Virus record (IMG/VR): IMGVR_UViG_3300015261_000002
Location: 124,001 to 188,000 of that record
Length of the DNA stretch: 64,000 nt
Direction: 5' to 3' (one strand)
Shown here: positions 18,548-29,447 of the stretch, in pieces
Position numbering within the stretch: the first letter of the stretch is position 1
Layout: the number at the start of each line of letters is the position of its first letter
The notes under the pieces: generated by a model
The model's database searches: none
Told to the model about the DNA's origin: nothing
Seen by the model: only the letters and a program-made list of their open reading frames with translations
Position numbers and translations under genes: made by a program

Positions 18548-18569
18548 AGTTTAACTCGTGAGGTTTAAT

Positions 18570-21500
18570 ATGGGGTTCCAAACGCGCACTGCGACCCGTG
18601 GTAACACGACGGTCGACTACACCAAGATTCGTGAGAACATCAAGAATGTGTCGCCAGCCATTGCGGCTACCCTGCGCAACGCGACGCCTAAAAATGGGGT
18701 CGCTCCTGATCGTGAGGAAGCTGGTGGTACTAAGACCGTCAACGAATATAAGCTTCATCGGCTGAGTAACATCATCAGCAATAACATCAACTCGGCATAT
18801 GACCTTCGGTCTATCACGCCGATGATTGACAAGGCCAACCTGATCTGGAACACGATCATCCTGTACCCTAACGGGAAACAGGACAAGATGTTGACCTACG
18901 ACACGCTGAGTTCGAAAATCAAGAATGCGGCTTTGCACACCAGCCTACTGGGCATCTGGGACAATTATTACACCAATGACTATAAGATCGAGTCGCTTTT
19001 AAAGAAGATGCTCGACGATATCATGTGGAATACCGGCAGTTACGCGATCTTTAACCTGAGCCGTCCCGGCCTGGATTACTTGATCAACGGTTCCGAAGTT
19101 GATCCCTCCAAACGGAGTGGTAACGAAGAATTCATCAAGGCAAAGAGCGAACTGGATCGTGAGTTCGTAAGCCGTGATGGCAAGACCCTTGTGAAGAACA
19201 AGGGACGCTTTGTTCGCAACCCATTCGCGGCTAAGGCGGCTAACTCCGATAACGCCTCTGTCAGTGGCCTGGAAGCGTTGTTCACGACCGGTTCTGATCT
19301 GGCGGAAGAAGAGTTCTCCATCTTTGACCCGTCCAGCGATGAGGGCAAGCTGTTTAATATCACCATTACCGATAACCCGGCAGTGTTGTACCTCCAGAAG
19401 TTCCAGGAGGCTCGACGCGACCAGGACATCAAGTCGGTCATGGGGGCAGAGAGTTTTGATAACATCATCTCTTCTGCCATGATGACTCAGAAGCAGCGTG
19501 ACGCTGAAGCGGCTAAAGCCGAAGAAGACGCCAACAAGGGCGGCAAGAAGAAGGGCGGCGAAGGTAAGGCAGGTAAACCTGAACTGGCCACCACTCAGAA
19601 CCTGAACGAAGACCAGCTTAATGCTTTGAATGCTTCGGTGTTCAAGCCACGTAACCTGCGCAGTCAGTCGTTGCAGTTCATCAAGTCAAACGACTCGCTG
19701 AGCGTAGCACCTTACGGCCGTGGTCTGAGCTGGCATATTCCTTCTGAAGCGATCTTCCCGATCCACTTCAACGGCAGTAACGGCAAGATCGATGACTACA
19801 TCATCCTGCTCGATCCGGAAACTGGTGCGTTCCTGAAGAACACTGATGACCCAGAGTTCTACCAGTCGTTGGCGAAGAACAAAGACAGCATCACAAACAA
19901 GAACAAGATGGGCAGCGACAACTCGCTCGTCTCCAGTTTGCGTACGGTGCAGTCTGGCAAGCCGTGTGACTTCGACATGTCTGAGTTTGCTGACATGGCC
20001 GAGAAGAGCATTGTGCGTCAGTTCATCTCGTCTGTTTATAGCGACAAGGCCAACAGCATCAGCATTACCCTAGACGAAGAGGTCAACAAGATCTTCCTGG
20101 CGCGTATCTTTAAAGGCCAGGGTGTGCGTTGCCTGTACGTTCCGGGTGAAGCTGTTTCGTACGGTGCTATCAAGTTCAACCGTCTGGGCGTTGGTCAGTC
20201 CCTGACTCAAGCAGCAAAGATGCAGATTGCTCGTCTGGCAGCTTACGACGTAGCGGATGCATTGGCTAACCTGGAAGCAGCTCAGCCTCATACCGAGATG
20301 GTTATCAACATCGAGAAAGAGGACTCTGATCCAGAACACACCATTGCGCTTGCTCGTGCAACCTTCTTCGACACCAACCCTAAGCTGCACTCCATCCTGT
20401 CGACGGCCCAGCTGTCGGTTCCTCAGGTAGTGGATGCACTGCGGGAAGCGTCGCTGTCGGTTAAGGTAAACGCAGGCGACAACGTTCACTTGCCGACACC
20501 GGATATCACTACGCAGGGTAAACCTAAGGATAACTTCCAGCCGGTGGACCAGGCCAGTCGTGATGCCGTAATGAACTCCATCGCAAACTACTTCAACCTG
20601 CCTCGTGCATGGCTGGATGTATCGGACGATCAGAACAACTTCAAGATTGAAGCGGTGACTGAGTACGAGATGGTGTTCAACCAAGCTGTTAACTGGCAGG
20701 AAATGATCTGCGACTTCTTGATTGACTTCCAGCGTAAACATGCTCGAGTCAATGGTCCTCTGATGCAAGACCTTGTTCAGTGCATTCTGGAAAACAAGAA
20801 CCTGTGGAAGCCTGATAGCAAAGAAGCCCTGGAAGGCAGCGATGAGGAAAAGGTCAAGGTTATCCTGTCTGACTTCTTCTCCTCGGTTTATTGCTACCTG
20901 CCGGTGCCTACCAGTACTGAATCCACTAACAAGCTGAAGGAAAGCTTGGACGCGGTGACTGCATTGGTGGGTGCGTGGGAAGAGGCTGCGGGTAACAACG
21001 GTGTGCTGCCTCAGATCTTGAAGATGCTCAACATCAACTCCGAAGATTTCACCGACGCGGAAATCAAAGCGATGGTGAAGTCTGCTCTGACCACTGAAGC
21101 ATTCCGCAAGTTTAACTTGCCGATGCCGTTTGATGAGATTGTTAACGAAGGTAAAGGTGGCGGTATCGCTTCGCTTGTGCAGAAAATGCTGCATCAGCGC
21201 ATCAACACCGCTAGCTTCGTGGCAGACCTTATTGATGGGGTGGTTGACTCCAACAAGAAGCTCATTAAACAGTTTGGCAGTAAACTGGCGAAGAAACTTG
21301 AGCCGGACGAACCTGCTGCTGGGGGGGGAGGAGACAATGGTGGGTTGCCTGATGATGATAGCGCGCTTACTGGATCTCCTGATAATGATCTGGGTGCGGG
21401 TGCGGGTCCCGACGATCAAGACGTTGATAATCCTCTCGGGGATAACAGCGATCCTGATGCTGTTGATGCTGACTCCGATACGCCGACTGATAAAGACGAC

Positions 21501-21584
21501 GATGCGGAGCCTAAAGACGACAAGCCGGCTGATGATGAACCGGGTGGGAAGAACTTCAACCCATGGCCAGGTGACAAAGCGTAA
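18570..21584 (+). CDS. Portal protein candidate (phiKZ gp129-like)
   Basis: Start ATG 18570 (SD GAGG), about 1004 aa. Long acidic disordered C-tail, G-x-E processing motifs in the N-terminal third, and position divergent from the gp128-like gene. Confidence 0.72.
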   Translation: MGFQTRTATRGNTTVDYTKIRENIKNVSPAIAATLRNATPKNGVAPDREEAGGTKTVNEYKLHRLSNIISNNINSAYDLRSITPMIDKANLIWNTIILYPNGKQDKMLTYDTLSSKIKNAALHTSLLGIWDNYYTNDYKIESLLKKMLDDIMWNTGSYAIFNLSRPGLDYLINGSEVDPSKRSGNEEFIKAKSELDREFVSRDGKTLVKNKGRFVRNPFAAKAANSDNASVSGLEALFTTGSDLAEEEFSIFDPSSDEGKLFNITITDNPAVLYLQKFQEARRDQDIKSVMGAESFDNIISSAMMTQKQRDAEAAKAEEDANKGGKKKGGEGKAGKPELATTQNLNEDQLNALNASVFKPRNLRSQSLQFIKSNDSLSVAPYGRGLSWHIPSEAIFPIHFNGSNGKIDDYIILLDPETGAFLKNTDDPEFYQSLAKNKDSITNKNKMGSDNSLVSSLRTVQSGKPCDFDMSEFADMAEKSIVRQFISSVYSDKANSISITLDEEVNKIFLARIFKGQGVRCLYVPGEAVSYGAIKFNRLGVGQSLTQAAKMQIARLAAYDVADALANLEAAQPHTEMVINIEKEDSDPEHTIALARATFFDTNPKLHSILSTAQLSVPQVVDALREASLSVKVNAGDNVHLPTPDITTQGKPKDNFQPVDQASRDAVMNSIANYFNLPRAWLDVSDDQNNFKIEAVTEYEMVFNQAVNWQEMICDFLIDFQRKHARVNGPLMQDLVQCILENKNLWKPDSKEALEGSDEEKVKVILSDFFSSVYCYLPVPTSTESTNKLKESLDAVTALVGAWEEAAGNNGVLPQILKMLNINSEDFTDAEIKAMVKSALTTEAFRKFNLPMPFDEIVNEGKGGGIASLVQKMLHQRINTASFVADLIDGVVDSNKKLIKQFGSKLAKKLEPDEPAAGGGGDNGGLPDDDSALTGSPDNDLGAGAGPDDQDVDNPLGDNSDPDAVDADSDTPTDKDDDAEPKDDKPADDEPGGKNFNPWPGDKA

Positions 21585-21607
21585 ATAGCAAAAAAGAAAG
21601 AACCATA

Positions 21608-21656
21608 GCTAACCCTCCTAGCCTTTGCGGGCTAGGAGGGTTAGCCTTATGGCTGC
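21608..21656. terminator. Bidirectional terminator
   Basis: 16-bp perfect stem GCTAACCCTCCTAGCC / GGCTAGGAGGGTTAGC. Followed by TTATGGCTGC on the plus strand and by a U-rich run on the minus strand. Confidence 0.85.
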
Positions 21657-22277
21657 TTACTGCTGATCAGCAGCTTGTTCTGGTGCTGGTTCTTCAGCAA
21701 CTTCTTTCGCAGGAGTAACCGACGCACGCAGACGATCGGTCATTGCAACGACTGCCAGCAGAAGGCTTTCACCACGACCGGCGCTCAGGAGCTCTTCCAG
21801 TTGCTCGAAGGTGCTGACGGCATTGAAGCCAGCGGCGAGTTCTTCGTCGGTAGGACCGGCAGCCGGCACTTCCACTTCAACGCGCTTTTCAACGGGTTCG
21901 ATGGTCGAAGCCACGGCGGTCAGTACGCGGGACTTCATTTCACCCAGGGCGTCGGCCAGTTCGTTGCCAGCAGCCAGAGGTGCAGCTTCGGTCAGCAGGT
22001 CGGCGAAGTGGTTGGTCAGGGTGTCCAGGTCAGTGACCGTGGAAACGTTGTTCATGGCCGCTTCAGGGGTCATGCGTGCCGCTTCAGGTGCGGCTTCCAC
22101 CACAGGCTTGCCGGTGGCTGCGATCAGACGCTCTTTGATCAGGGAGACCAGACCGTCGCCGCTCGGGCAAGGGTCGTTCGCGTAACGCTGAGGGCGTGGA
22201 TAAACCTGCGTGAGGCGATGGTCGGCCAGCAGGTTCGCTACGTCGCCATTGGTGAGATGTGGGTAAGTACTAGACAT
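21657..22277 (-). CDS. Hypothetical protein, probably abundant; N-terminal module shared with 22381..22971
   Basis: 206 aa, Ala/Glu-rich, strong codon bias like the capsid gene; internal repeat NNVSTVTDLDTL / NAVSTFEQLEEL. Confidence 0.75.
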   Translation of the reverse strand: MSSTYPHLTNGDVANLLADHRLTQVYPRPQRYANDPCPSGDGLVSLIKERLIAATGKPVVEAAPEAARMTPEAAMNNVSTVTDLDTLTNHFADLLTEAAPLAAGNELADALGEMKSRVLTAVASTIEPVEKRVEVEVPAAGPTDEELAAGFNAVSTFEQLEELLSAGRGESLLLAVVAMTDRLRASVTPAKEVAEEPAPEQAADQQ

Positions 22278-22327
22278 CGTTTCTCTCTCTTTTGGTTACG
22301 GATGGGTTTCTACAAAGGATGTTAACA

Positions 22328-22374
22328 GGACAAAAAAATAAAAAGATGTTACCTGTGCCGTGTTACCGGCACAG
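22328..22374 (-). terminator. Intrinsic terminator in the accessory cassette
   Basis: CUGUGCCG stem, then a long U-tract ending UUUUUUGUCC. Confidence 0.75.
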
Positions 22375-22380
22375 TGTCTA

Positions 22381-22971
22381 CTAAATAACTTCGTGCAGTT
22401 CACTTCTTCTTGCCAGAAAGCAAAAGAAAGGTGTGAGACTTCGAGCCGTTCGTTCTTTGTTGATTTCCGCAAGGACCTGATTATCTTCTTTGGGGAAAAC
22501 GACACAGCAGTCACTAGGCAGCAGTGACGTTCTCGCAAGAGTATCGATACTGGTCGTCAGGAAGGTAGAGAACAGGTGTGACGCATCGTCACGGGAAGGC
22601 CAGGAACTAGGAAGGTTGCCATCCACTACCAATTTGTCATACAACGCTTCAAATGTATTGCGCATTTGATCAGGTGTGGTTGTAAACATCTTGTCGGGGA
22701 ATGGCATGATTTGTGGTAACGAGAACGACAACAGATCCGGATTGGGGTTACGTCGCTCTTTCGCGTCATCCCAACTCAAGTTAGGTCCCGACTTCTTCAG
22801 GCGACGCTGGATCTCGTAGACAAGTTCCAGACCGGTCGGTATTTCAATCCCCTCGAACTCCTTAGGAGGATTCTCGAAGTTGATCACACGATAACCGCCT
22901 AGCAAGATTGCCAGGTCTTCGTCGGTCAGGTGTTTGTAGCATTTCGGCGGTACGTCAGTAATGTCGGTCAT
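22381..22971 (-). CDS. Hypothetical protein; N-terminal module shared with 21657..22277
   Basis: 196 aa, SD GGAG; YKHLTDEDLAILL...PTGLELVYEIQRRL. Confidence 0.7.
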   Translation of the reverse strand: MTDITDVPPKCYKHLTDEDLAILLGGYRVINFENPPKEFEGIEIPTGLELVYEIQRRLKKSGPNLSWDDAKERRNPNPDLLSFSLPQIMPFPDKMFTTTPDQMRNTFEALYDKLVVDGNLPSSWPSRDDASHLFSTFLTTSIDTLARTSLLPSDCCVVFPKEDNQVLAEINKERTARSLTPFFCFLARRSELHEVI

Positions 22972-22980
22972 GCTATTCTC

Positions 22981-23343
22981 CTAATGAAGAGTAGGTGATT
23001 GAGGTGGGTTGTTGGCCGAGAAAATATAGACAGGGTCTGCGAGCAGGCTGTCGATCGGTTTAAGCAGGATTACCCAGTCTTTGAAGGGCTGATGTCTGTA
23101 GAAGCTTGCAAAGCTCCTGGGCAGCGTCTCAGGCGCTCCTACATAGAGAAACGCGTGGTAGTGAAGTAAAGTGTTAGCAAAGTCGTCTTCACTTACTACA
23201 ATGCGCAGTTCAGTGATAATATCCTTCGACTCACGGATACCTTCAGGCCAACCATCAACTACAATTGTCCCGGTAATGTAATCCAGGATTTGTTCAATGA
23301 TCTCCATCCCCATGAGTTTGGGATGGTGCAGTTTAAGCAACAT
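22981..23343 (-). CDS. Hypothetical protein
   Basis: 120 aa, SD GAGGA, in the accessory cassette. Confidence 0.6.
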   Translation of the reverse strand: MLLKLHHPKLMGMEIIEQILDYITGTIVVDGWPEGIRESKDIITELRIVVSEDDFANTLLHYHAFLYVGAPETLPRSFASFYRHQPFKDWVILLKPIDSLLADPVYIFSANNPPQSPTLH

Positions 23344-23360
23344 GTTAGATTCCTCGTAGG

Positions 23361-23397
23361 GGACAAAAAATAAAGGGAAGTGTAACCTCCCCTTTAT
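23361..23397 (-). terminator. Intrinsic terminator in the accessory cassette
   Basis: AUAAAGGGGAG-loop-CUUCCCUUUAU followed by UUUUUGUCC. Confidence 0.8.
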
Positions 23398-23404
23398 TCA
23401 CCGC

Positions 23405-23668
23405 TTAGGCCGCCTTGGCCATAAACAGGTTCAGCAAGTTGCCGTTGAACACCATGTGATCTTTCAGTGTTTTAGGGAACTGCTGAACTTCCATTTTTAC
23501 CAGTGGCTCGTAGAGGCGGGTGTCCAGGATTACCTGGTCGCCGCCTTCAACTGCACTGCTGTTACGCAGGCTTTCCAGTTTGTTGCGGAAACGGATCAAT
23601 TCCACTTCAGACTTAGGAAAGTCGCTGGTGGAGAAATCCATCAGCATGTCAAAGATTTTAGCGACCAT
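23405..23668 (-). CDS. Hypothetical protein
   Basis: 87 aa, SD AAGGAG. Confidence 0.65.
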   Translation of the reverse strand: MVAKIFDMLMDFSTSDFPKSEVELIRFRNKLESLRNSSAVEGGDQVILDTRLYEPLVKMEVQQFPKTLKDHMVFNGNLLNLFMAKAA

Positions 23669-23701
23669 GGTTAAACTCCTTTTAGAGGAGCCTAGGTGAG
23701 A

Positions 23702-24034
23702 TTACTTAGGCTCGTTTACGAAACAGTCAACGATCGAGCACACTGTGCCCGCTACTGCAACACCGAACAGGCCGGACATAGTCCCGCTGATGATCTTGCC
23801 GGTGTTGTTGATTTCTGCGGTACCCCAGAGAGTACCTACTGCATAACCAGCGACGCCGCCAGCAATGCCACCCAGGATCCCGCTGGCCAGGGGGCTGCCT
23901 TGAGCAACCGATGCTGCTGCACCCACCAGGGCACCGGCAACACCAGCGATTTGACCAACCTTGATACCTTCGTCACGCTGGCCACGGAAGGAGCGCATAA
24001 TGGATTCACGTTCTGCTTGGTTCATCGAGGACAT
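23702..24034 (-). CDS. Glycine-zipper membrane protein
   Basis: Start ATG 24034 (SD GGGAG), 110 aa. Repeated GxxxG/AxxxG hydrophobic segments (VGQIAGVAGALVGAAA, GILGGIAGGVAGYAVG, GTMSGLFGVAVAG). Confidence 0.7.
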   Translation of the reverse strand: MSSMNQAERESIMRSFRGQRDEGIKVGQIAGVAGALVGAAASVAQGSPLASGILGGIAGGVAGYAVGTLWGTAEINNTGKIISGTMSGLFGVAVAGTVCSIVDCFVNEPK

Positions 24035-24089
24035 AGTTGTAACTCCCATTGGGTTAAGATGTGAAAGACTTATTGTCTTAATCACCCAA

Positions 24090-24097
24090 GTAATATA
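24090..24097 (-). promoter_or_regulatory. phiKZ-type early (virion RNAP) promoter motif TATATTAC
   Basis: Exact TATATTAC on the minus strand, about 55 nt upstream of ATG 24034, in an AT-rich gap after a terminator; equals the published phiKZ early consensus. Confidence 0.65.
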
Positions 24098-24142
24098 GAC
24101 GTGAAACTAACTGTATCTTAAAAAAACAAAATGCGTAATAGA

Positions 24143-24174
24143 GGTAACCTACCGGGGCGACCCGGTAGGTTACT
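24143..24174 (-). terminator. Hairpin ending the nvRNAP operon
   Basis: Stem GTAACCTACCGGG / CCCGGTAGGTTAC, just after the 24190 stop. Confidence 0.75.
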
Positions 24175-26540: not shown

Positions 26541-28202
26541 TCAAGCAAAGGGTTCACGGTAGCGTAGGCGCTTATCCGTCTTCAGGTACAGCCACTTCAG
26601 CGATGGATCCAACGCTGTTGTTTTGCCTTGAATCAGATACACACATGGGTTGAGATAACCTCGACCATCCGGGTAGGGTCCAGTTACCCGAAGGAAGCTG
26701 TTGACAAATGCAATCGACGCGTGTGCGCTACCTGCACTGTCTGTGGTGTCAAATTCACCACGCTTCTTCGCTTTGGTCGAATTCGTGTAAACACGATGTT
26801 GAGGCATGCAACCCAACACATAGTCCACGTAAGGGCAATCGGTTGGTGTCGCTTCCTGAATGAGATTGGTTGTGCGCGAATTGTCAATCTCCTTAATGTG
26901 AAAGTTGTTAGTCAGGAAACGAGCCACCTTTTTCTGGTTTAGCTCGGAGTTGTTTTTGATTTCGTGCTTGAACTTGTTGGCGGCTGTGATCAGCTTGTCC
27001 AACGTGAACTCCAAGCTAGCCAGTTCCTTGTGGAACATGTCCGCTCGATCCGTGGTTTGTACAATCTCACTACGGTTAGCGATGATGTAGTTGAACAACT
27101 CAAACATGTTGCTCACTACGATCGACTGGCTGGCAAACTTCTTAATCGAGTCTTCGTCGAGGTACTCGTTAATGGAATCAAAGTGCTCGTTCATCAAGCG
27201 CATGATGTAATCATTGCTGTCACCGGATTTAACCGAGCAACGACCAATGATCAACTTCCAGTAGTTCGGGTTATCGATGTTGTCAATATCGAAGTACGAC
27301 GAAAGGCAATCGACTACGAACAACAGAGCACTGGCATACTGCAAGCCCATTGCACTGAGTTCTTTACGTTTGCTCGATTTGTTGCGAATTGCGATGCCGT
27401 AGTCATGGGGAACAAACTCCCCCAGGTACTTGGCATTACCGGAGCGACTTGCGCGGGTAAAGATCTCCCAGCGGTCTTCCGGACGGCATTCCGATAGCAG
27501 TACGTCGATAGGTGCGATTTCATAATCACACTCACCAAAGATATCGATTGCCTTGCTGAACCCCATGTCAGCAAAGGTATACCATGCCAACAACGGCATA
27601 GGGGTTTTCGTATCGGTGATCTTGCGCGACTCAGTCGGGCTGTAGAAGCGGTTAGCCGCCAGGTTCAGCTCGGTGGTCTTGTACGTGATGTTACCCGTGT
27701 CACTAAGGACCTGGGAGAACTTGAAGTGCTCGGTACCGATCTTGAACTTAAAGCCCAACACCTTAACAAACAAGGCGTTCTCTTTGGTAACCGGCAAACC
27801 ACGCTCTGCCAACACGATTTGCAAGCTGTACTGCGTCCCCCGCAGCCACAGGTCACCATAGACATCGGTATACGGCAGCATGGTGTACTGCTGCATCTCG
27901 ATGATCTCACCAGCGCGGTTGACGTATTCAAACTTCAACTTAACCGGGTACAGGGTTTCCTTGTGGATGTCGAACAGCTTTGTACTGCTTTGAATCAAGT
28001 GGCCGATGTACTCATCAGGATCGACTTCGTCAACACCGATAAAGAACACGCCACGTTTTTCGATACTCTTGAAGATCATCTTCAGAGCATTCTCGTAATA
28101 GTAGACAGCACCCTCAAATTCGTTTTGATGAAATCCCTCTGTGATCGTTGAGTTAAACCGAGGCATTGAATTATCAATGGCTTTGGCTAATTTCAGTGAC
28201 AT
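26541..28202 (-). CDS. Non-virion RNA polymerase beta subunit, N-terminal part (phiKZ gp123-like)
   Basis: 553 aa. N-terminus AIDNSMPRFNSTITEG and C-terminal HASIAFV...PDGRGYLNP match gp123 (HASIAEV...PDGRGRLN); two genes downstream of the capsid gene. Confidence 0.9.
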   Translation of the reverse strand: MSLKLAKAIDNSMPRFNSTITEGFHQNEFEGAVYYYENALKMIFKSIEKRGVFFIGVDEVDPDEYIGHLIQSSTKLFDIHKETLYPVKLKFEYVNRAGEIIEMQQYTMLPYTDVYGDLWLRGTQYSLQIVLAERGLPVTKENALFVKVLGFKFKIGTEHFKFSQVLSDTGNITYKTTELNLAANRFYSPTESRKITDTKTPMPLLAWYTFADMGFSKAIDIFGECDYEIAPIDVLLSECRPEDRWEIFTRASRSGNAKYLGEFVPHDYGIAIRNKSSKRKELSAMGLQYASALLFVVDCLSSYFDIDNIDNPNYWKLIIGRCSVKSGDSNDYIMRLMNEHFDSINEYLDEDSIKKFASQSIVVSNMFELFNYIIANRSEIVQTTDRADMFHKELASLEFTLDKLITAANKFKHEIKNNSELNQKKVARFLTNNFHIKEIDNSRTTNLIQEATPTDCPYVDYVLGCMPQHRVYTNSTKAKKRGEFDTTDSAGSAHASIAFVNSFLRVTGPYPDGRGYLNPCVYLIQGKTTALDPSLKWLYLKTDKRLRYREPFA

Positions 28203-29349: not shown

Positions 29350-29447
29350 GGTGGGAACCTCTATCGACTTCCTTAAAAGCCTATTTGTAATACGTAGTCT
29401 GCTCTAATAATGTAGGTTTAAAAAATTATAACAAGAATACAAAATCC

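What the first reader, a model, noticed from the sequence alone, without database searches (positions are those of the whole stretch)
21657..24100. Early-promoter accessory cassette inserted into the conserved morphogenesis block
Five small minus-strand genes (110, 87, 120, 196 and 206 aa) with no motif I recognise sit between the portal and the gp124-like gene. They follow an exact TATATTAC phiKZ early consensus and are split by their own terminators. Early, lineage-specific small genes in jumbo phages typically act in host takeover, anti-defence or exclusion. This is the best candidate for an undescribed functional module in the window, though its function is not shown by the sequence.
Basis: partly seen in the sequence, partly recalled or inferred. 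Interest (0 to 1): 0.68.

Follow-up and report, generated by a model that had tools for sequence, protein, structure and literature searches.

The report
Early accessory gene island in jumbo phage
Five small genes of unknown function lie behind a conserved early-type promoter at a spot that jumbo phages related to phage EL fill with changing sets of small genes; the structure is real, but it is an ordinary kind of phage accessory island and its function is still unknown.

Summary
Five minus-strand genes of 110, 87, 120, 196 and 206 aa (g1 to g5) lie between a gp124-like gene and the portal. They follow an exact TATATTAC element and are punctuated by strong hairpin terminators.

The promoter call is strengthened. 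About 60 nt around the element are invariant in five relatives that differ by 15-25% elsewhere. The element is recognisable at the same position in phage EL, Erwinia phage RisingSun and metagenomic relatives. A promoter of the same class precedes the adjacent operon, which encodes a non-virion RNA polymerase subunit, an early gene in phiKZ.

The interpretation needs correction in three respects.
- The cassette is the tail of an early gene block, not an insertion into a purely late block.
- The site is a variable island across this phage group (0.9 kb to more than 10 kb, 1 to about 17 genes).
- g1, a glycine-zipper membrane protein, is conserved across EL, RisingSun and Miami. Only g2 to g5 are restricted to this clade.

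g4 and g5 are paralogs. They share a previously undescribed N-terminal domain of about 55 aa joined to fast-diverging C-terminal parts, and relatives carry 1 to 4 copies.

No sequence or fold search gave a functional match. Host interaction is inferred, not shown.

The parts
29406..29424 (-). Promoter of the same class (an exact match to the published EL consensus) upstream of the neighbouring early operon: a 378-aa gene, the non-virion RNA polymerase beta-like subunit and the 775-aa gene.
   Evidence: Exact match to WTTTYAAACCTACATTATY, the only one in the window, with 0.04 expected by chance. The same element lies at the same position in EL, RisingSun, L012 and L013.
26541..28202 (-). 553-aa homolog of phiKZ gp123 and EL gp80 (non-virion RNA polymerase beta-like subunit). 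It marks the upstream genes as an early block.
   Evidence: tblastn gives 66% identity to EL gp80 and E 6e-15 to phiKZ gp123. gp123 is listed as a non-virion polymerase subunit made from early genes in PMC8287921.
24190..26517 (-). 775-aa gene resembling EL gp81 and phiKZ gp124. It is the last gene of the upstream operon and forms the right border of the island.
   Evidence: PHROG 13213 at E 9e-151. 39% identity to EL gp81 and 30% to RisingSun gp86.
24120..24172 (-). Terminator T0 of the upstream operon: a 12-bp stem (24145-24172) followed by a spacer and a T run.
   Evidence: Free energy -21 kcal/mol, z -4.85. The stem is conserved in the relatives with compensatory changes.
24062..24126 (-). 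Early-type promoter block. It contains TAAGATACAG, a TTTCAC element and CTATATTAC (TATATTAC at 24090-24097), followed by TTGGGTGA and the start of the 5' UTR.
   Evidence: Searches show a unique exact match to the extended consensus. The block is invariant across L004-L008. It is recognisable after the gp124-like gene in EL, RisingSun, L012, L013, L019-L023, L026 and L033. The published consensus sequences are in PMC7058600. The T-rich element plus extended -10 box are described in PMC8244752.
23702..24034 (-). g1: a 110-aa glycine-zipper membrane protein, the conserved anchor gene of the island.
   Evidence: 18% Gly. Hydrophobic segments at residues 23-71 and 80-108, with repeated GxxxG motifs. 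72-76% identity in close relatives. Profile hits to EL gp82 (E 4e-12), Miami gp043 (E 4e-8), and after iteration RisingSun gp87 and Miami gp041. Present in 20 of 21 complete islands surveyed.
23405..23668 (-). g2: an 87-aa soluble protein, present in some genomes and absent from others.
   Evidence: Present in L004 and L005 and absent from L006-L008, where g1 runs straight into the terminator. Also found in L013, L022 and L023. Only 9 homologs among 5.8 billion proteins.
23365..23394 (-). Internal terminator T1 after g2. The g3 ribosome-binding site follows about 20 nt later, which leaves no room for a promoter.
   Evidence: -17.1 kcal/mol, z -4.8. Conserved with compensatory changes in all relatives.
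22981..23343 (-). g3: a 120-aa acidic alpha/beta protein. It is well conserved and lies 10 nt upstream of g4.
   Evidence: 83% mean column identity across six genomes. 13 homologs, all within the clade. The AlphaFold2 model has pLDDT 83 and pTM 0.78. No fold match was found.
22381..22971 (-). g4: a 196-aa two-domain protein with the shared N-terminal domain (about residues 9-62) and a fast-evolving C-terminal alpha/beta domain (85-196).
   Evidence: g4 and g5 profiles hit each other at 1e-7 and 4e-5. The model has pLDDT 78, about 90 in the C-domain. dN is 0.61 against 0.087 for the neighbouring gene. No fold match was found.
22332..22377 (-). Internal terminator T2 after g4.
   Evidence: -17 kcal/mol, z -4.6. 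L006 and L008 carry an entirely different stem sequence at the same place.
22283..22325 (-). Conserved 43-nt block between T2 and the g5 start. It may be the g5 5' UTR or a regulatory element, and its function is unknown.
   Evidence: Nearly identical in 5 of 6 genomes and replaced in L008. No second copy in the window.
21657..22277 (-). g5: a 206-aa protein with the shared N-terminal domain followed by a long acidic, Ala/Glu-rich region (net charge -17).
   Evidence: Only 10 homologs, all within the clade. dN 0.43. A full-length ortholog occurs in L012 and L019-L022.
21595..21646 (-). Terminator T3: a 17-bp stem between the convergent genes g5 and portal.
   Evidence: -34.7 kcal/mol, z -6.3. 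The relatives show compensatory changes in the central stem.
18558..21584 (+). Portal gene (1008 aa), the left border of the island.
   Evidence: PHROG 3004 at E 1e-214. tblastn hits phiKZ gp129 and records annotated as portal proteins.

Best explanation
The region is one early-type transcription unit that occupies a conserved variable locus of EL-related nucleus-forming jumbo phages (Chimalliviridae).

A promoter of the class recognised by the injected virion RNA polymerase sits directly after the terminator of the neighbouring operon, which encodes a subunit of the non-virion RNA polymerase. Transcription would run through g1 and g2, a first hairpin terminator, g3 and g4, a second terminator, then g5, and stop at a very strong terminator facing the portal gene. 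There is no room for a promoter between the first terminator and g3. The distal genes must therefore be reached by read-through, which would give graded expression with g1 highest.

g1 is a small inner-membrane glycine-zipper protein kept at this site across the wider phage group. g3, g4 and g5 are soluble acidic proteins. g4 and g5 belong to a paralog family built from a conserved N-terminal two-helix domain of about 55 residues and exchangeable, fast-diverging C-terminal parts.

The most likely role is accessory. I expect the products to bind host or phage partners early in infection, with the shared N-terminal domain docking to a common partner and the variable C-terminal part giving specificity.

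What is shown: the gene structure, the promoter class and its conservation, the terminators, the paralogy, the variable content of the site, and the fast divergence and mosaicism.
What is inferred: early timing, read-through, membrane location of g1, and any host-directed function.
For: Promoter:
- The extended motif matches exactly and uniquely.
- About 60 nt are invariant in five relatives whose flanking genes have proportions of synonymous differences (pS) near 0.5.
- The element lies at the same position in EL, RisingSun and about 12 metagenomic relatives.
- It fits the published early consensus sequences of 201phi2-1, OBP and phiKZ, and the T-rich element plus extended -10 box architecture.
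- A second promoter of the same class precedes the operon that holds the phiKZ gp123 homolog. Non-virion polymerase genes are early in phiKZ.

Operon layout:
- Four stable hairpins each followed by a T run, with compensatory changes in relatives.
- Only about 20 nt separate T1 from the g3 ribosome-binding site, and 10 nt separate g3 from g4.

Accessory nature:
- In 21 complete loci the island ranges from 0.9 to 6.2 kb, and exceeds 10 kb in EL.
- g2 is present in some genomes and absent from others.
- g2, g3 and g5 each have only 9-13 homologs among 5.8 billion proteins.

Paralog family:
- The g4 and g5 profiles hit each other.
- The N-domain occurs in proteins of 73-316 aa with unrelated C-terminal parts. 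The island survey extends the range to 619 aa.
- Every such protein on a contig long enough to judge lies in this island.
- Islands carry up to 4 copies.

Fast divergence and mosaicism:
- dN is 0.61 for g4 and 0.43 for g5, against 0.087 for the 775-aa gene.
- Nucleotide identity falls to 40-65% over g4 and g5, against 80-95% in the flanks.
- The nearest relative switches from L004/L005 to L007 at the g3/g4 border.
Against: - There are no expression data, because the phage is known only from a metagenome. Early timing rests on motif class alone. In 201phi2-1, promoter class did not always predict the expected timing of non-virion polymerase genes.
- Several more distant relatives (L024, L027, L028, L032, L036) have no recognisable copy of the promoter directly after the gp124-like gene.
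- dN/dS is below 1 for every gene, so positive selection is not shown.
- The proportion of synonymous differences is also higher in g3-g4 (0.64 and 0.72, against 0.51 in the 775-aa gene; g5 is 0.58). The divergence may therefore reflect exchange of old alleles by recombination rather than an arms race.
- No sequence or fold search gave any functional hint.
- The broad conservation of g1 would also fit a core, non-accessory role.
Confidence: 0.6

Rival explanations
1. The genes encode late morphogenesis or virion-associated proteins, for example portal-proximal, head-internal or ejected proteins. In this view the shared N-terminal domain of g4 and g5 is a packaging or targeting signal, as in the polymorphic internal-protein locus of phage T4.
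For: The cassette lies next to the portal and close to the major capsid gene. The family has a conserved N-terminal module with variable C-terminal parts and several paralogs in one locus, which resembles the layout of T4 internal proteins (from my own knowledge of T4). g1 has weak compositional resemblance to the glycine-rich membrane segments of tape-measure proteins (E above 0.2).
Against: The promoter is of the early class and is shared with the RNA polymerase subunit operon. None of the five proteins matches a structural PHROG. RisingSun gp87 is not mentioned anywhere in the main text of the paper that reports the lysate proteome, which is weak evidence. g2 to g5 are absent from EL, RisingSun, OBP, Miami and phiKZ.
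Confidence: 0.12
2. The island is mostly dispensable cargo. In this view g2 to g5 are recombination-shuffled ORFans under relaxed constraint with no specific role, and only g1 and the promoter are functional.
For: Content varies greatly between relatives. g2 is present in some genomes and absent from others. The island is mosaic, with a breakpoint at the g3/g4 border. dN/dS is higher for g4 and g5 (0.31 and 0.37) than for the neighbouring gene (0.10). Nothing is detectably related to any known family.
Against: All five genes keep intact reading frames, with dN/dS well below 1, in six genomes whose synonymous sites are near saturation. g3 has 83% column identity with long invariant stretches. 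The N-domain keeps nearly invariant positions across very distant members. The AlphaFold2 models are confident for g3 and for the g4 C-domain.
Confidence: 0.18
3. The island is mainly a superinfection-exclusion or membrane-remodelling module centred on g1. In this view g1 inserts into the inner membrane early and either blocks entry of a second phage or acts on the membrane vesicle that first encloses the injected genome.
For: g1 is the first and presumably most strongly expressed gene after the early-type promoter. It is strongly hydrophobic with glycine zippers. It is the only island gene kept across EL, RisingSun, Miami and nearly all metagenomic relatives. Small early membrane proteins mediate exclusion in T4, for example Imm and Sp (from my own knowledge).
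Against: g1 has no homology to any known exclusion protein and no Pfam glycine-zipper match. The topology is predicted from hydropathy alone. This explanation says nothing about g2 to g5.
Confidence: 0.1

Closest known systems
phiKZ-type early operons driven by the AT-rich virion RNA polymerase promoter (TATATTAC and its extended forms in 201phi2-1, OBP and N1M2)
   Same: The -10-like element is identical. The upstream T-rich element and the downstream GTG match the published consensus sequences. The promoter is followed by small hypothetical genes, as reported for the early promoters of 201phi2-1.
   Different: This phage is only about 20% identical to phiKZ in the portal and belongs to the EL branch. 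The published EL consensus (TTTYAAACCTACATTATY) is a variant of the same motif. The window carries one copy of each variant. Timing has not been measured in any EL-like phage, as far as my searches of the held paper library showed.
The run of small genes EL gp82 to about gp99, the single gene RisingSun gp87, and the sets OBP_128-131 and Miami gp040-043, all at the same genomic site
   Same: All lie between the gp124-like gene and the portal, on the same strand, and consist of small hypothetical genes. EL gp82, RisingSun gp87, and Miami gp041 and gp043 are homologs of g1. EL and RisingSun carry the same promoter element.
   Different: g2 to g5 and the N-terminal domain family are absent from these cultured phages. 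The gene number ranges from 1 to about 17.
Hyperplastic regions of T4-like phages: early ORFan clusters between conserved core modules
   Same: Conserved flanks with content that varies from genome to genome. The genes are small, of unknown function and sit behind early-type promoters. There is evidence of mosaic recombination.
   Different: This is a different phage family with a different transcription machinery, a phage-encoded multisubunit polymerase. The comparison with T4 rests on my own knowledge and was not tested here.
The T4 internal-protein locus and, more generally, polymorphic families with a constant N-terminal module and variable C-terminal parts
   Same: Several paralogs sit in one locus and share a short N-terminal module attached to unrelated C-terminal domains.
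   Different: There is no sequence relationship. The module here is a folded two-helix domain of about 55 residues, not a 10-residue targeting peptide. The promoter class argues against packaging into the head.

Membership tests
Chimallivirus early (virion RNA polymerase) promoter | AT-rich -10-like element TATATTAC | tested here: met
   Exact match at 24090-24097 (-), the only one in 64 kb.
Chimallivirus early (virion RNA polymerase) promoter | Extended consensus: a T-rich element about 10 nt upstream and GTG about 4 nt downstream, as in 201phi2-1, OBP and N1M2 | tested here: met
   TTTNANNNNTATATTACNNNNGTG matches with 0 mismatches. The consensus sequences are from PMC7058600. The T-rich element upstream of -19 is described in PMC8244752.
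Chimallivirus early (virion RNA polymerase) promoter | Conserved in relatives beyond the neutral expectation, at the same genomic position | tested here: met
   The block is invariant in L004-L008. It is recognisable in EL, RisingSun, L012, L013, L019-L023, L026 and L033. It is not found directly after the gp124-like gene in L024, L027, L028, L032 and L036.
Chimallivirus early (virion RNA polymerase) promoter | Transcription starts here early in infection and depends on the virion polymerase | not testable with these tools
   The genome comes from a metagenome, and my searches of the paper library found no transcript data for EL-like phages.
Intrinsic (factor-independent) terminators | A stable GC-rich hairpin followed by a T run, with the stem kept by compensatory changes | tested here: met
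   Four sites with -17 to -35 kcal/mol and z -4.6 to -6.3. Stem sequences differ between relatives but stay paired. At T0 and T2 the T run is separated from the stem by 8-15 nt, so the simple scan missed them.
Variable accessory island (hyperplastic region) | Conserved flanking genes with gene content that differs between related genomes | tested here: met
   In 21 complete loci the island holds 1 to 9 genes in 0.9-6.2 kb, and EL exceeds 10 kb.
Glycine-zipper membrane proteins (Pfam Gly-zipper families) | Match to a curated glycine-zipper model | tested here: not met
   No Pfam match apart from DUF6297 at E 0.04, below its cut-off. The GxxxG repeats and the hydropathy are seen directly in the sequence, so g1 resembles these proteins but is not filed as a member.
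Virion structural proteins of phiKZ-like phages | Homology to known structural families, or universal conservation across the family | tested here: not met
   No structural PHROG matches any of g1 to g5. g2 to g5 are absent from EL, RisingSun, OBP, Miami and phiKZ. g1 is conserved only in the EL, RisingSun and Miami branch. Presence in virions could not be tested.
SAP / HeH / LEM-like helix-extension-helix domains (considered for the g4/g5 N-terminal domain) | Sequence match to the family models, or a fold match | tested here: not met
   Across 21 members the best LEM hit is E 0.75 and there is no SAP hit. No match to PDB sequences. The fold search was dominated by the C-domain, so the N-domain fold was barely tested.
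Known anti-phage defence families (PADLOC) | Match to a defence-system protein model | tested here: not met
   Only chance-level hits at E 0.025 or weaker. No library of anti-defence proteins was available.

The most novel reading that the evidence does not exclude
The N-terminal domain of about 55 residues shared by g4 and g5 defines an undescribed, island-restricted polymorphic protein family of EL-related jumbo phages. In this reading the domain is a common docking module that delivers interchangeable C-terminal effector domains to one hub. Candidate hubs are the early infection vesicle, the nuclear shell or its import machinery, the ribosome, or a host defence complex. The copies would be diversified and swapped by recombination under host pressure. 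g1 would then be the conserved membrane component of the same early system.
Probability: 0.2. Interest if true: 0.7.

Novelty: new member of a known kind. Interest (0 to 1): 0.4.

Why it matters
Nucleus-forming jumbo phages are studied for their cell-biology-like infection cycle and as therapeutic candidates. Most of their early genes are nevertheless unannotated.

This analysis identifies one fixed genomic address, between the gp124-like gene and the portal, where EL-related phages keep a conserved early-type promoter and a conserved small membrane protein while exchanging the other genes. It also defines a new modular protein family confined to that address. This gives experimenters a short list: EL gp82 and RisingSun gp87 in cultured phages, and g3, g4 and g5 as synthetic genes. 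It also gives them a natural variable slot for engineering.

It does not reveal a new mechanism by itself.

Tried and rejected
- **Near-identity DNA search of the region against 50,697 phage records:** no match. tblastn of g1 against the same records: no match. The low-complexity filter probably removed the EL gp82 similarity that profile searches detect.
- **Family scans of all five proteins (Pfam, PHROGs, NCBIfam, PADLOC):** nothing above chance. Pfam scans of ten larger island proteins from relatives, including N-domain proteins of 292-619 aa, also found nothing.
- **PDB sequence-profile searches for g1, g5 and the N-domain:** nothing.
- **Fold searches of the g3 and g4 models:**
  - Foldseek E-values were 0.2 or higher: g3 against both PDB and BFVD, g4 against PDB only. 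The best VIA-align Z was 4.3 for both models.
  - These values are far below the level at which a shared fold can be claimed.
  - The top lists for g3 and the g4 C-domain overlap, which suggested a common fold. A profile-profile comparison gave 0.2% probability, so I dropped that idea.
- **Complex prediction of g3 with the g4 N-domain:** this was motivated by their conserved adjacency. It returned no verdict (score 0.00), which is no evidence either way.
- **Two hits in the g4 profile search:** P0027 (a 5692-aa repeat protein) and P0038 are repeat or low-complexity artefacts.
- **Scan of viral contigs with the N-domain alignment:** failed because the alignment has no stretch conserved enough.
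- **Conserved 43-nt block upstream of g5:** searched as a possible recurring promoter, but there is no second copy in the window.
- **Rfam and tRNA scans of the window:** nothing found.
- **Link to the phiKZ lysis cassette:** checked and dismissed, because that cluster lies elsewhere, around gp143.


Full report
**What the window is**

The window is part of a 224.7-kb uncultured viral contig, IMGVR_UViG_3300015261_000002. Its closest cultured relatives are Pseudomonas phage EL and Erwinia phage RisingSun. Identity is 39% and 30% in the 775-aa gene and about 55% in the portal. It is therefore a new EL-branch member of the phiKZ-like, nucleus-forming jumbo phages.

**The observation**

The five minus-strand ORFs are present exactly as described.
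- For g1, the 110-aa form is the right one. Its ATG and the GGAG eight bases upstream are conserved in all relatives, whereas the upstream alternative starts are not.
- The left border is the portal, a homolog of phiKZ gp129.
- The right border is the homolog of EL gp81 and phiKZ gp124.
- All five genes are kept as intact reading frames in related genomes, with dN/dS of 0.12 to 0.37. They are real genes.

**The promoter**

TATATTAC as a bare 8-mer is not significant: one match against 0.45 expected. Four further lines of evidence make it convincing.
- The element sits inside an exact match to the longer consensus TTT-N-A-N4-TATATTAC-N4-GTG, derived from the published 201phi2-1 and OBP motifs. 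This is the only such match in 64 kb.
- About 60 nt, from TAAGATACAG through the TTTCAC element and CTATATTAC into the 5' UTR, are invariant in five relatives. The flanking genes of those relatives have proportions of synonymous differences (pS) near 0.5.
- The same element lies 100-140 nt after the stop of the gp124-like gene in EL (upstream of gp82), RisingSun (upstream of gp87) and about a dozen metagenomic relatives with only 30-60% protein identity.
- Its architecture, with conserved blocks near -10, -20 and -30, matches the mapped early promoters of phiKZ and 201phi2-1.

A second promoter of the same class, an exact match to the published EL consensus, lies at 29406-29424. It precedes a three-gene operon whose middle gene is the homolog of phiKZ gp123, a subunit of the non-virion RNA polymerase. 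That enzyme is made from early genes. This is the best internal argument that the motif class is early in this phage as well.

The cassette is not an early island inserted into a late block. The layout on the minus strand is:
1. major capsid gene;
2. early-type promoter, then the 378-aa gene, the polymerase subunit and the 775-aa gene, ending at terminator T0;
3. early-type promoter, then g1 and g2, ending at T1;
4. g3 and g4, ending at T2;
5. g5, ending at T3, which faces the convergent portal gene.

The cassette is thus the distal part of an early block that lies between the capsid and portal genes throughout this phage group.

**Terminators and operon logic**

All four hairpins are far more stable than shuffled controls. 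They keep their pairing through compensatory changes. At T2, L006 and L008 carry a completely different stem sequence at the same position.

Only about 20 nt separate the T run of T1 from the g3 ribosome-binding site, and g3 and g4 are 10 nt apart. No promoter fits there, so g3 to g5 must depend on read-through. I infer, but have not shown, graded expression with g1 highest.

In the genomes that lack g2, g1 runs directly into T1. g2 is therefore a clean insertion or deletion inside the first unit.

A 43-nt block between T2 and g5 is conserved in five of six genomes. It has no second copy in the window and its role is unknown.

**The site is a variable island**

Cultured phages carry different gene sets between the gp124-like gene and the portal:
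- RisingSun has 1 small gene.
- OBP has 4 and Miami has 4.
- EL has about 17.

In 21 complete loci from IMG/VR the island spans 0.9 to 6.2 kb and holds 1 to 9 genes.

Within the window's own clade, nucleotide identity is 80-95% in the flanks but falls to 40-65% over g4 and g5. The nearest relative also switches from L004/L005 (g0 through g3) to L007 (g4 through the portal), which indicates a recombination breakpoint at the g3/g4 border.

**The proteins**

*g1 (110 aa)*
- It is 18% glycine, with hydrophobic segments at residues 23-71 and 80-108 full of GxxxG repeats, and a basic N-terminus.
- Profile searches link it to EL gp82, RisingSun gp87, and Miami gp041 and gp043. It is found in 20 of 21 complete islands.
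- It is the conserved anchor gene of the island and is not lineage-specific. It matches no curated glycine-zipper model.

*g2 (87 aa)*
- It is soluble and occurs sporadically, with only 9 homologs.

*g3 (120 aa)*
- It is well conserved, with 83% column identity and 13 homologs.
- It gives a confident alpha/beta model (pLDDT 83) with no meaningful structural neighbour.

*g4 (196 aa) and g5 (206 aa)*
- They are paralogs through their first 55-60 residues. The g4 and g5 profiles hit each other at 1e-7 and 4e-5.
- The shared pattern is roughly Y-x-H-L-T-x-x-D-L-A-x-L-L, then P-x-G-x-x-L, then I-x-x-R-L.
- In the g4 model this region forms two helices joined by a long loop. A disordered linker and a confident C-terminal alpha/beta domain follow. 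That domain also has no structural neighbour.
- g5 continues into an Ala/Glu-rich region with net charge -17.

**The N-terminal domain family**

An exhaustive profile search of 1.84 billion representative proteins found three full-length g4 representatives. It also found ten proteins of 73-316 aa that share only the N-domain. Two further hits are artefacts.

Every one of these on a contig long enough to judge lies in the same island. The two on contigs of about 2.5 kb could not be placed by their flanks. One of those contigs (L017) also carries a g1 homolog.

Iterated searches show 1 to 4 copies per island, 75 to 619 aa long. None occurs in EL, RisingSun, OBP, Miami or phiKZ. No Pfam family matches the N-domain or any of the ten larger island proteins scanned, seven of which carry the N-domain. 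This is an undescribed, locus-restricted modular family.

**Rates of change**

Non-synonymous divergence is 0.087 in the 775-aa gene, 0.10-0.19 in g1 to g3, 0.61 in g4 and 0.43 in g5. The C-terminal parts change faster than the N-domain: pN/pS is 0.65 against 0.37 in g4.

Synonymous divergence is also higher in g3 and g4. dN/dS stays below 1 throughout. The data therefore fit exchange of long-diverged alleles by recombination at least as well as they fit positive selection. An arms race is not demonstrated.

**Mechanism and confidence**

I commit to an early-type accessory operon at a conserved variable locus. Its parts are a conserved small membrane protein and a set of soluble acidic proteins. 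Two of these share a docking-type N-terminal domain with exchangeable C-terminal parts, and they most likely bind host or phage partners early in infection (confidence 0.6 for the architecture and timing class, lower for the function).

The rivals are:
- virion-associated proteins with an N-terminal targeting module (0.12);
- largely dispensable shuffled cargo (0.18);
- a g1-centred exclusion or membrane module (0.10).

The first cannot be tested here. The second is not met for g2 to g5 and only partly approached by g1.

**Novelty and score**

Early ORFan clusters behind TATATTAC-type promoters, and variable islands between conserved phage modules, are known kinds of feature. The new elements are:
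- the recognition of this particular address as a group-wide variable slot with a conserved promoter and anchor gene;
- the N-domain family.

No function emerged. Interest is 0.4.

Noticed in passing
window 29406-29424 (-): An exact copy of the published EL promoter consensus lies between the major capsid gene and the 378-aa gene. It heads the operon that contains the non-virion RNA polymerase beta-like subunit. The same element is at the same place in EL, RisingSun, L012 and L013.
   Followed up: partly
window about 22970 (g3/g4 border); L003-L008: The nearest relative switches from L004/L005 (775-aa gene through g3) to L007 (g4 through the portal). This indicates a recombination breakpoint inside the cassette.
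   Followed up: partly
window 22283-22325 (-): A 43-nt block between terminator T2 and the g5 start codon is nearly identical in five of six genomes and replaced by unrelated sequence in L008. It has no second copy in the window, and its function is unknown.
   Followed up: partly
window about 21160-21584 and about 19100-19960 (portal gene): Two stretches of the portal gene are much more divergent between close relatives (59-84% and 61-71% nucleotide identity) than the rest of the gene (85-92%). One is the 3' end next to the island.
   Followed up: no
L018 8001-8555 and 8607-9632; L026 13713-14261 and 14299-15270: In these relatives the domain that is N-terminal in g4 and g5 lies at the C-terminal end or in the middle of longer ORFs. 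This could be domain shuffling, gene fusion or miscalled start codons.
   Followed up: no
L014 5674-6892 (same in L036); also L030 and L032 just after the gp124-like gene: In L014 and L036 the island begins with two paralogous genes of about 200 aa that have histidine-rich motifs (H-x-x-H-F-x-D-V and F-H-D-L-F). The first island gene of L030 and L032 begins with a similar N-terminal sequence. The one scanned (L014 5674-6279) has no Pfam match. No promoter element was found directly after the gp124-like gene in L014, L036 or L032, whereas L030 has CTATATTAC there.
   Followed up: partly
L014 8768-9409, L016 1958-2458, L017 1855-2457: The last island gene in these relatives belongs to another small family. 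It has an acidic, low-complexity N-terminal half and a conserved C-terminal motif (A-D-P-x-V-D-x-T-L-K ... N-F/L-M-R). It occupies the position that g5 holds in the window.
   Followed up: no
L030 (IMGVR_UViG_3300015261_000001, 238 kb): The metagenome that yielded the window's contig also yielded a second, distantly related EL-like jumbo phage (38% identity in the 775-aa protein). Two members of the group therefore co-occurred in one sample.
   Followed up: no
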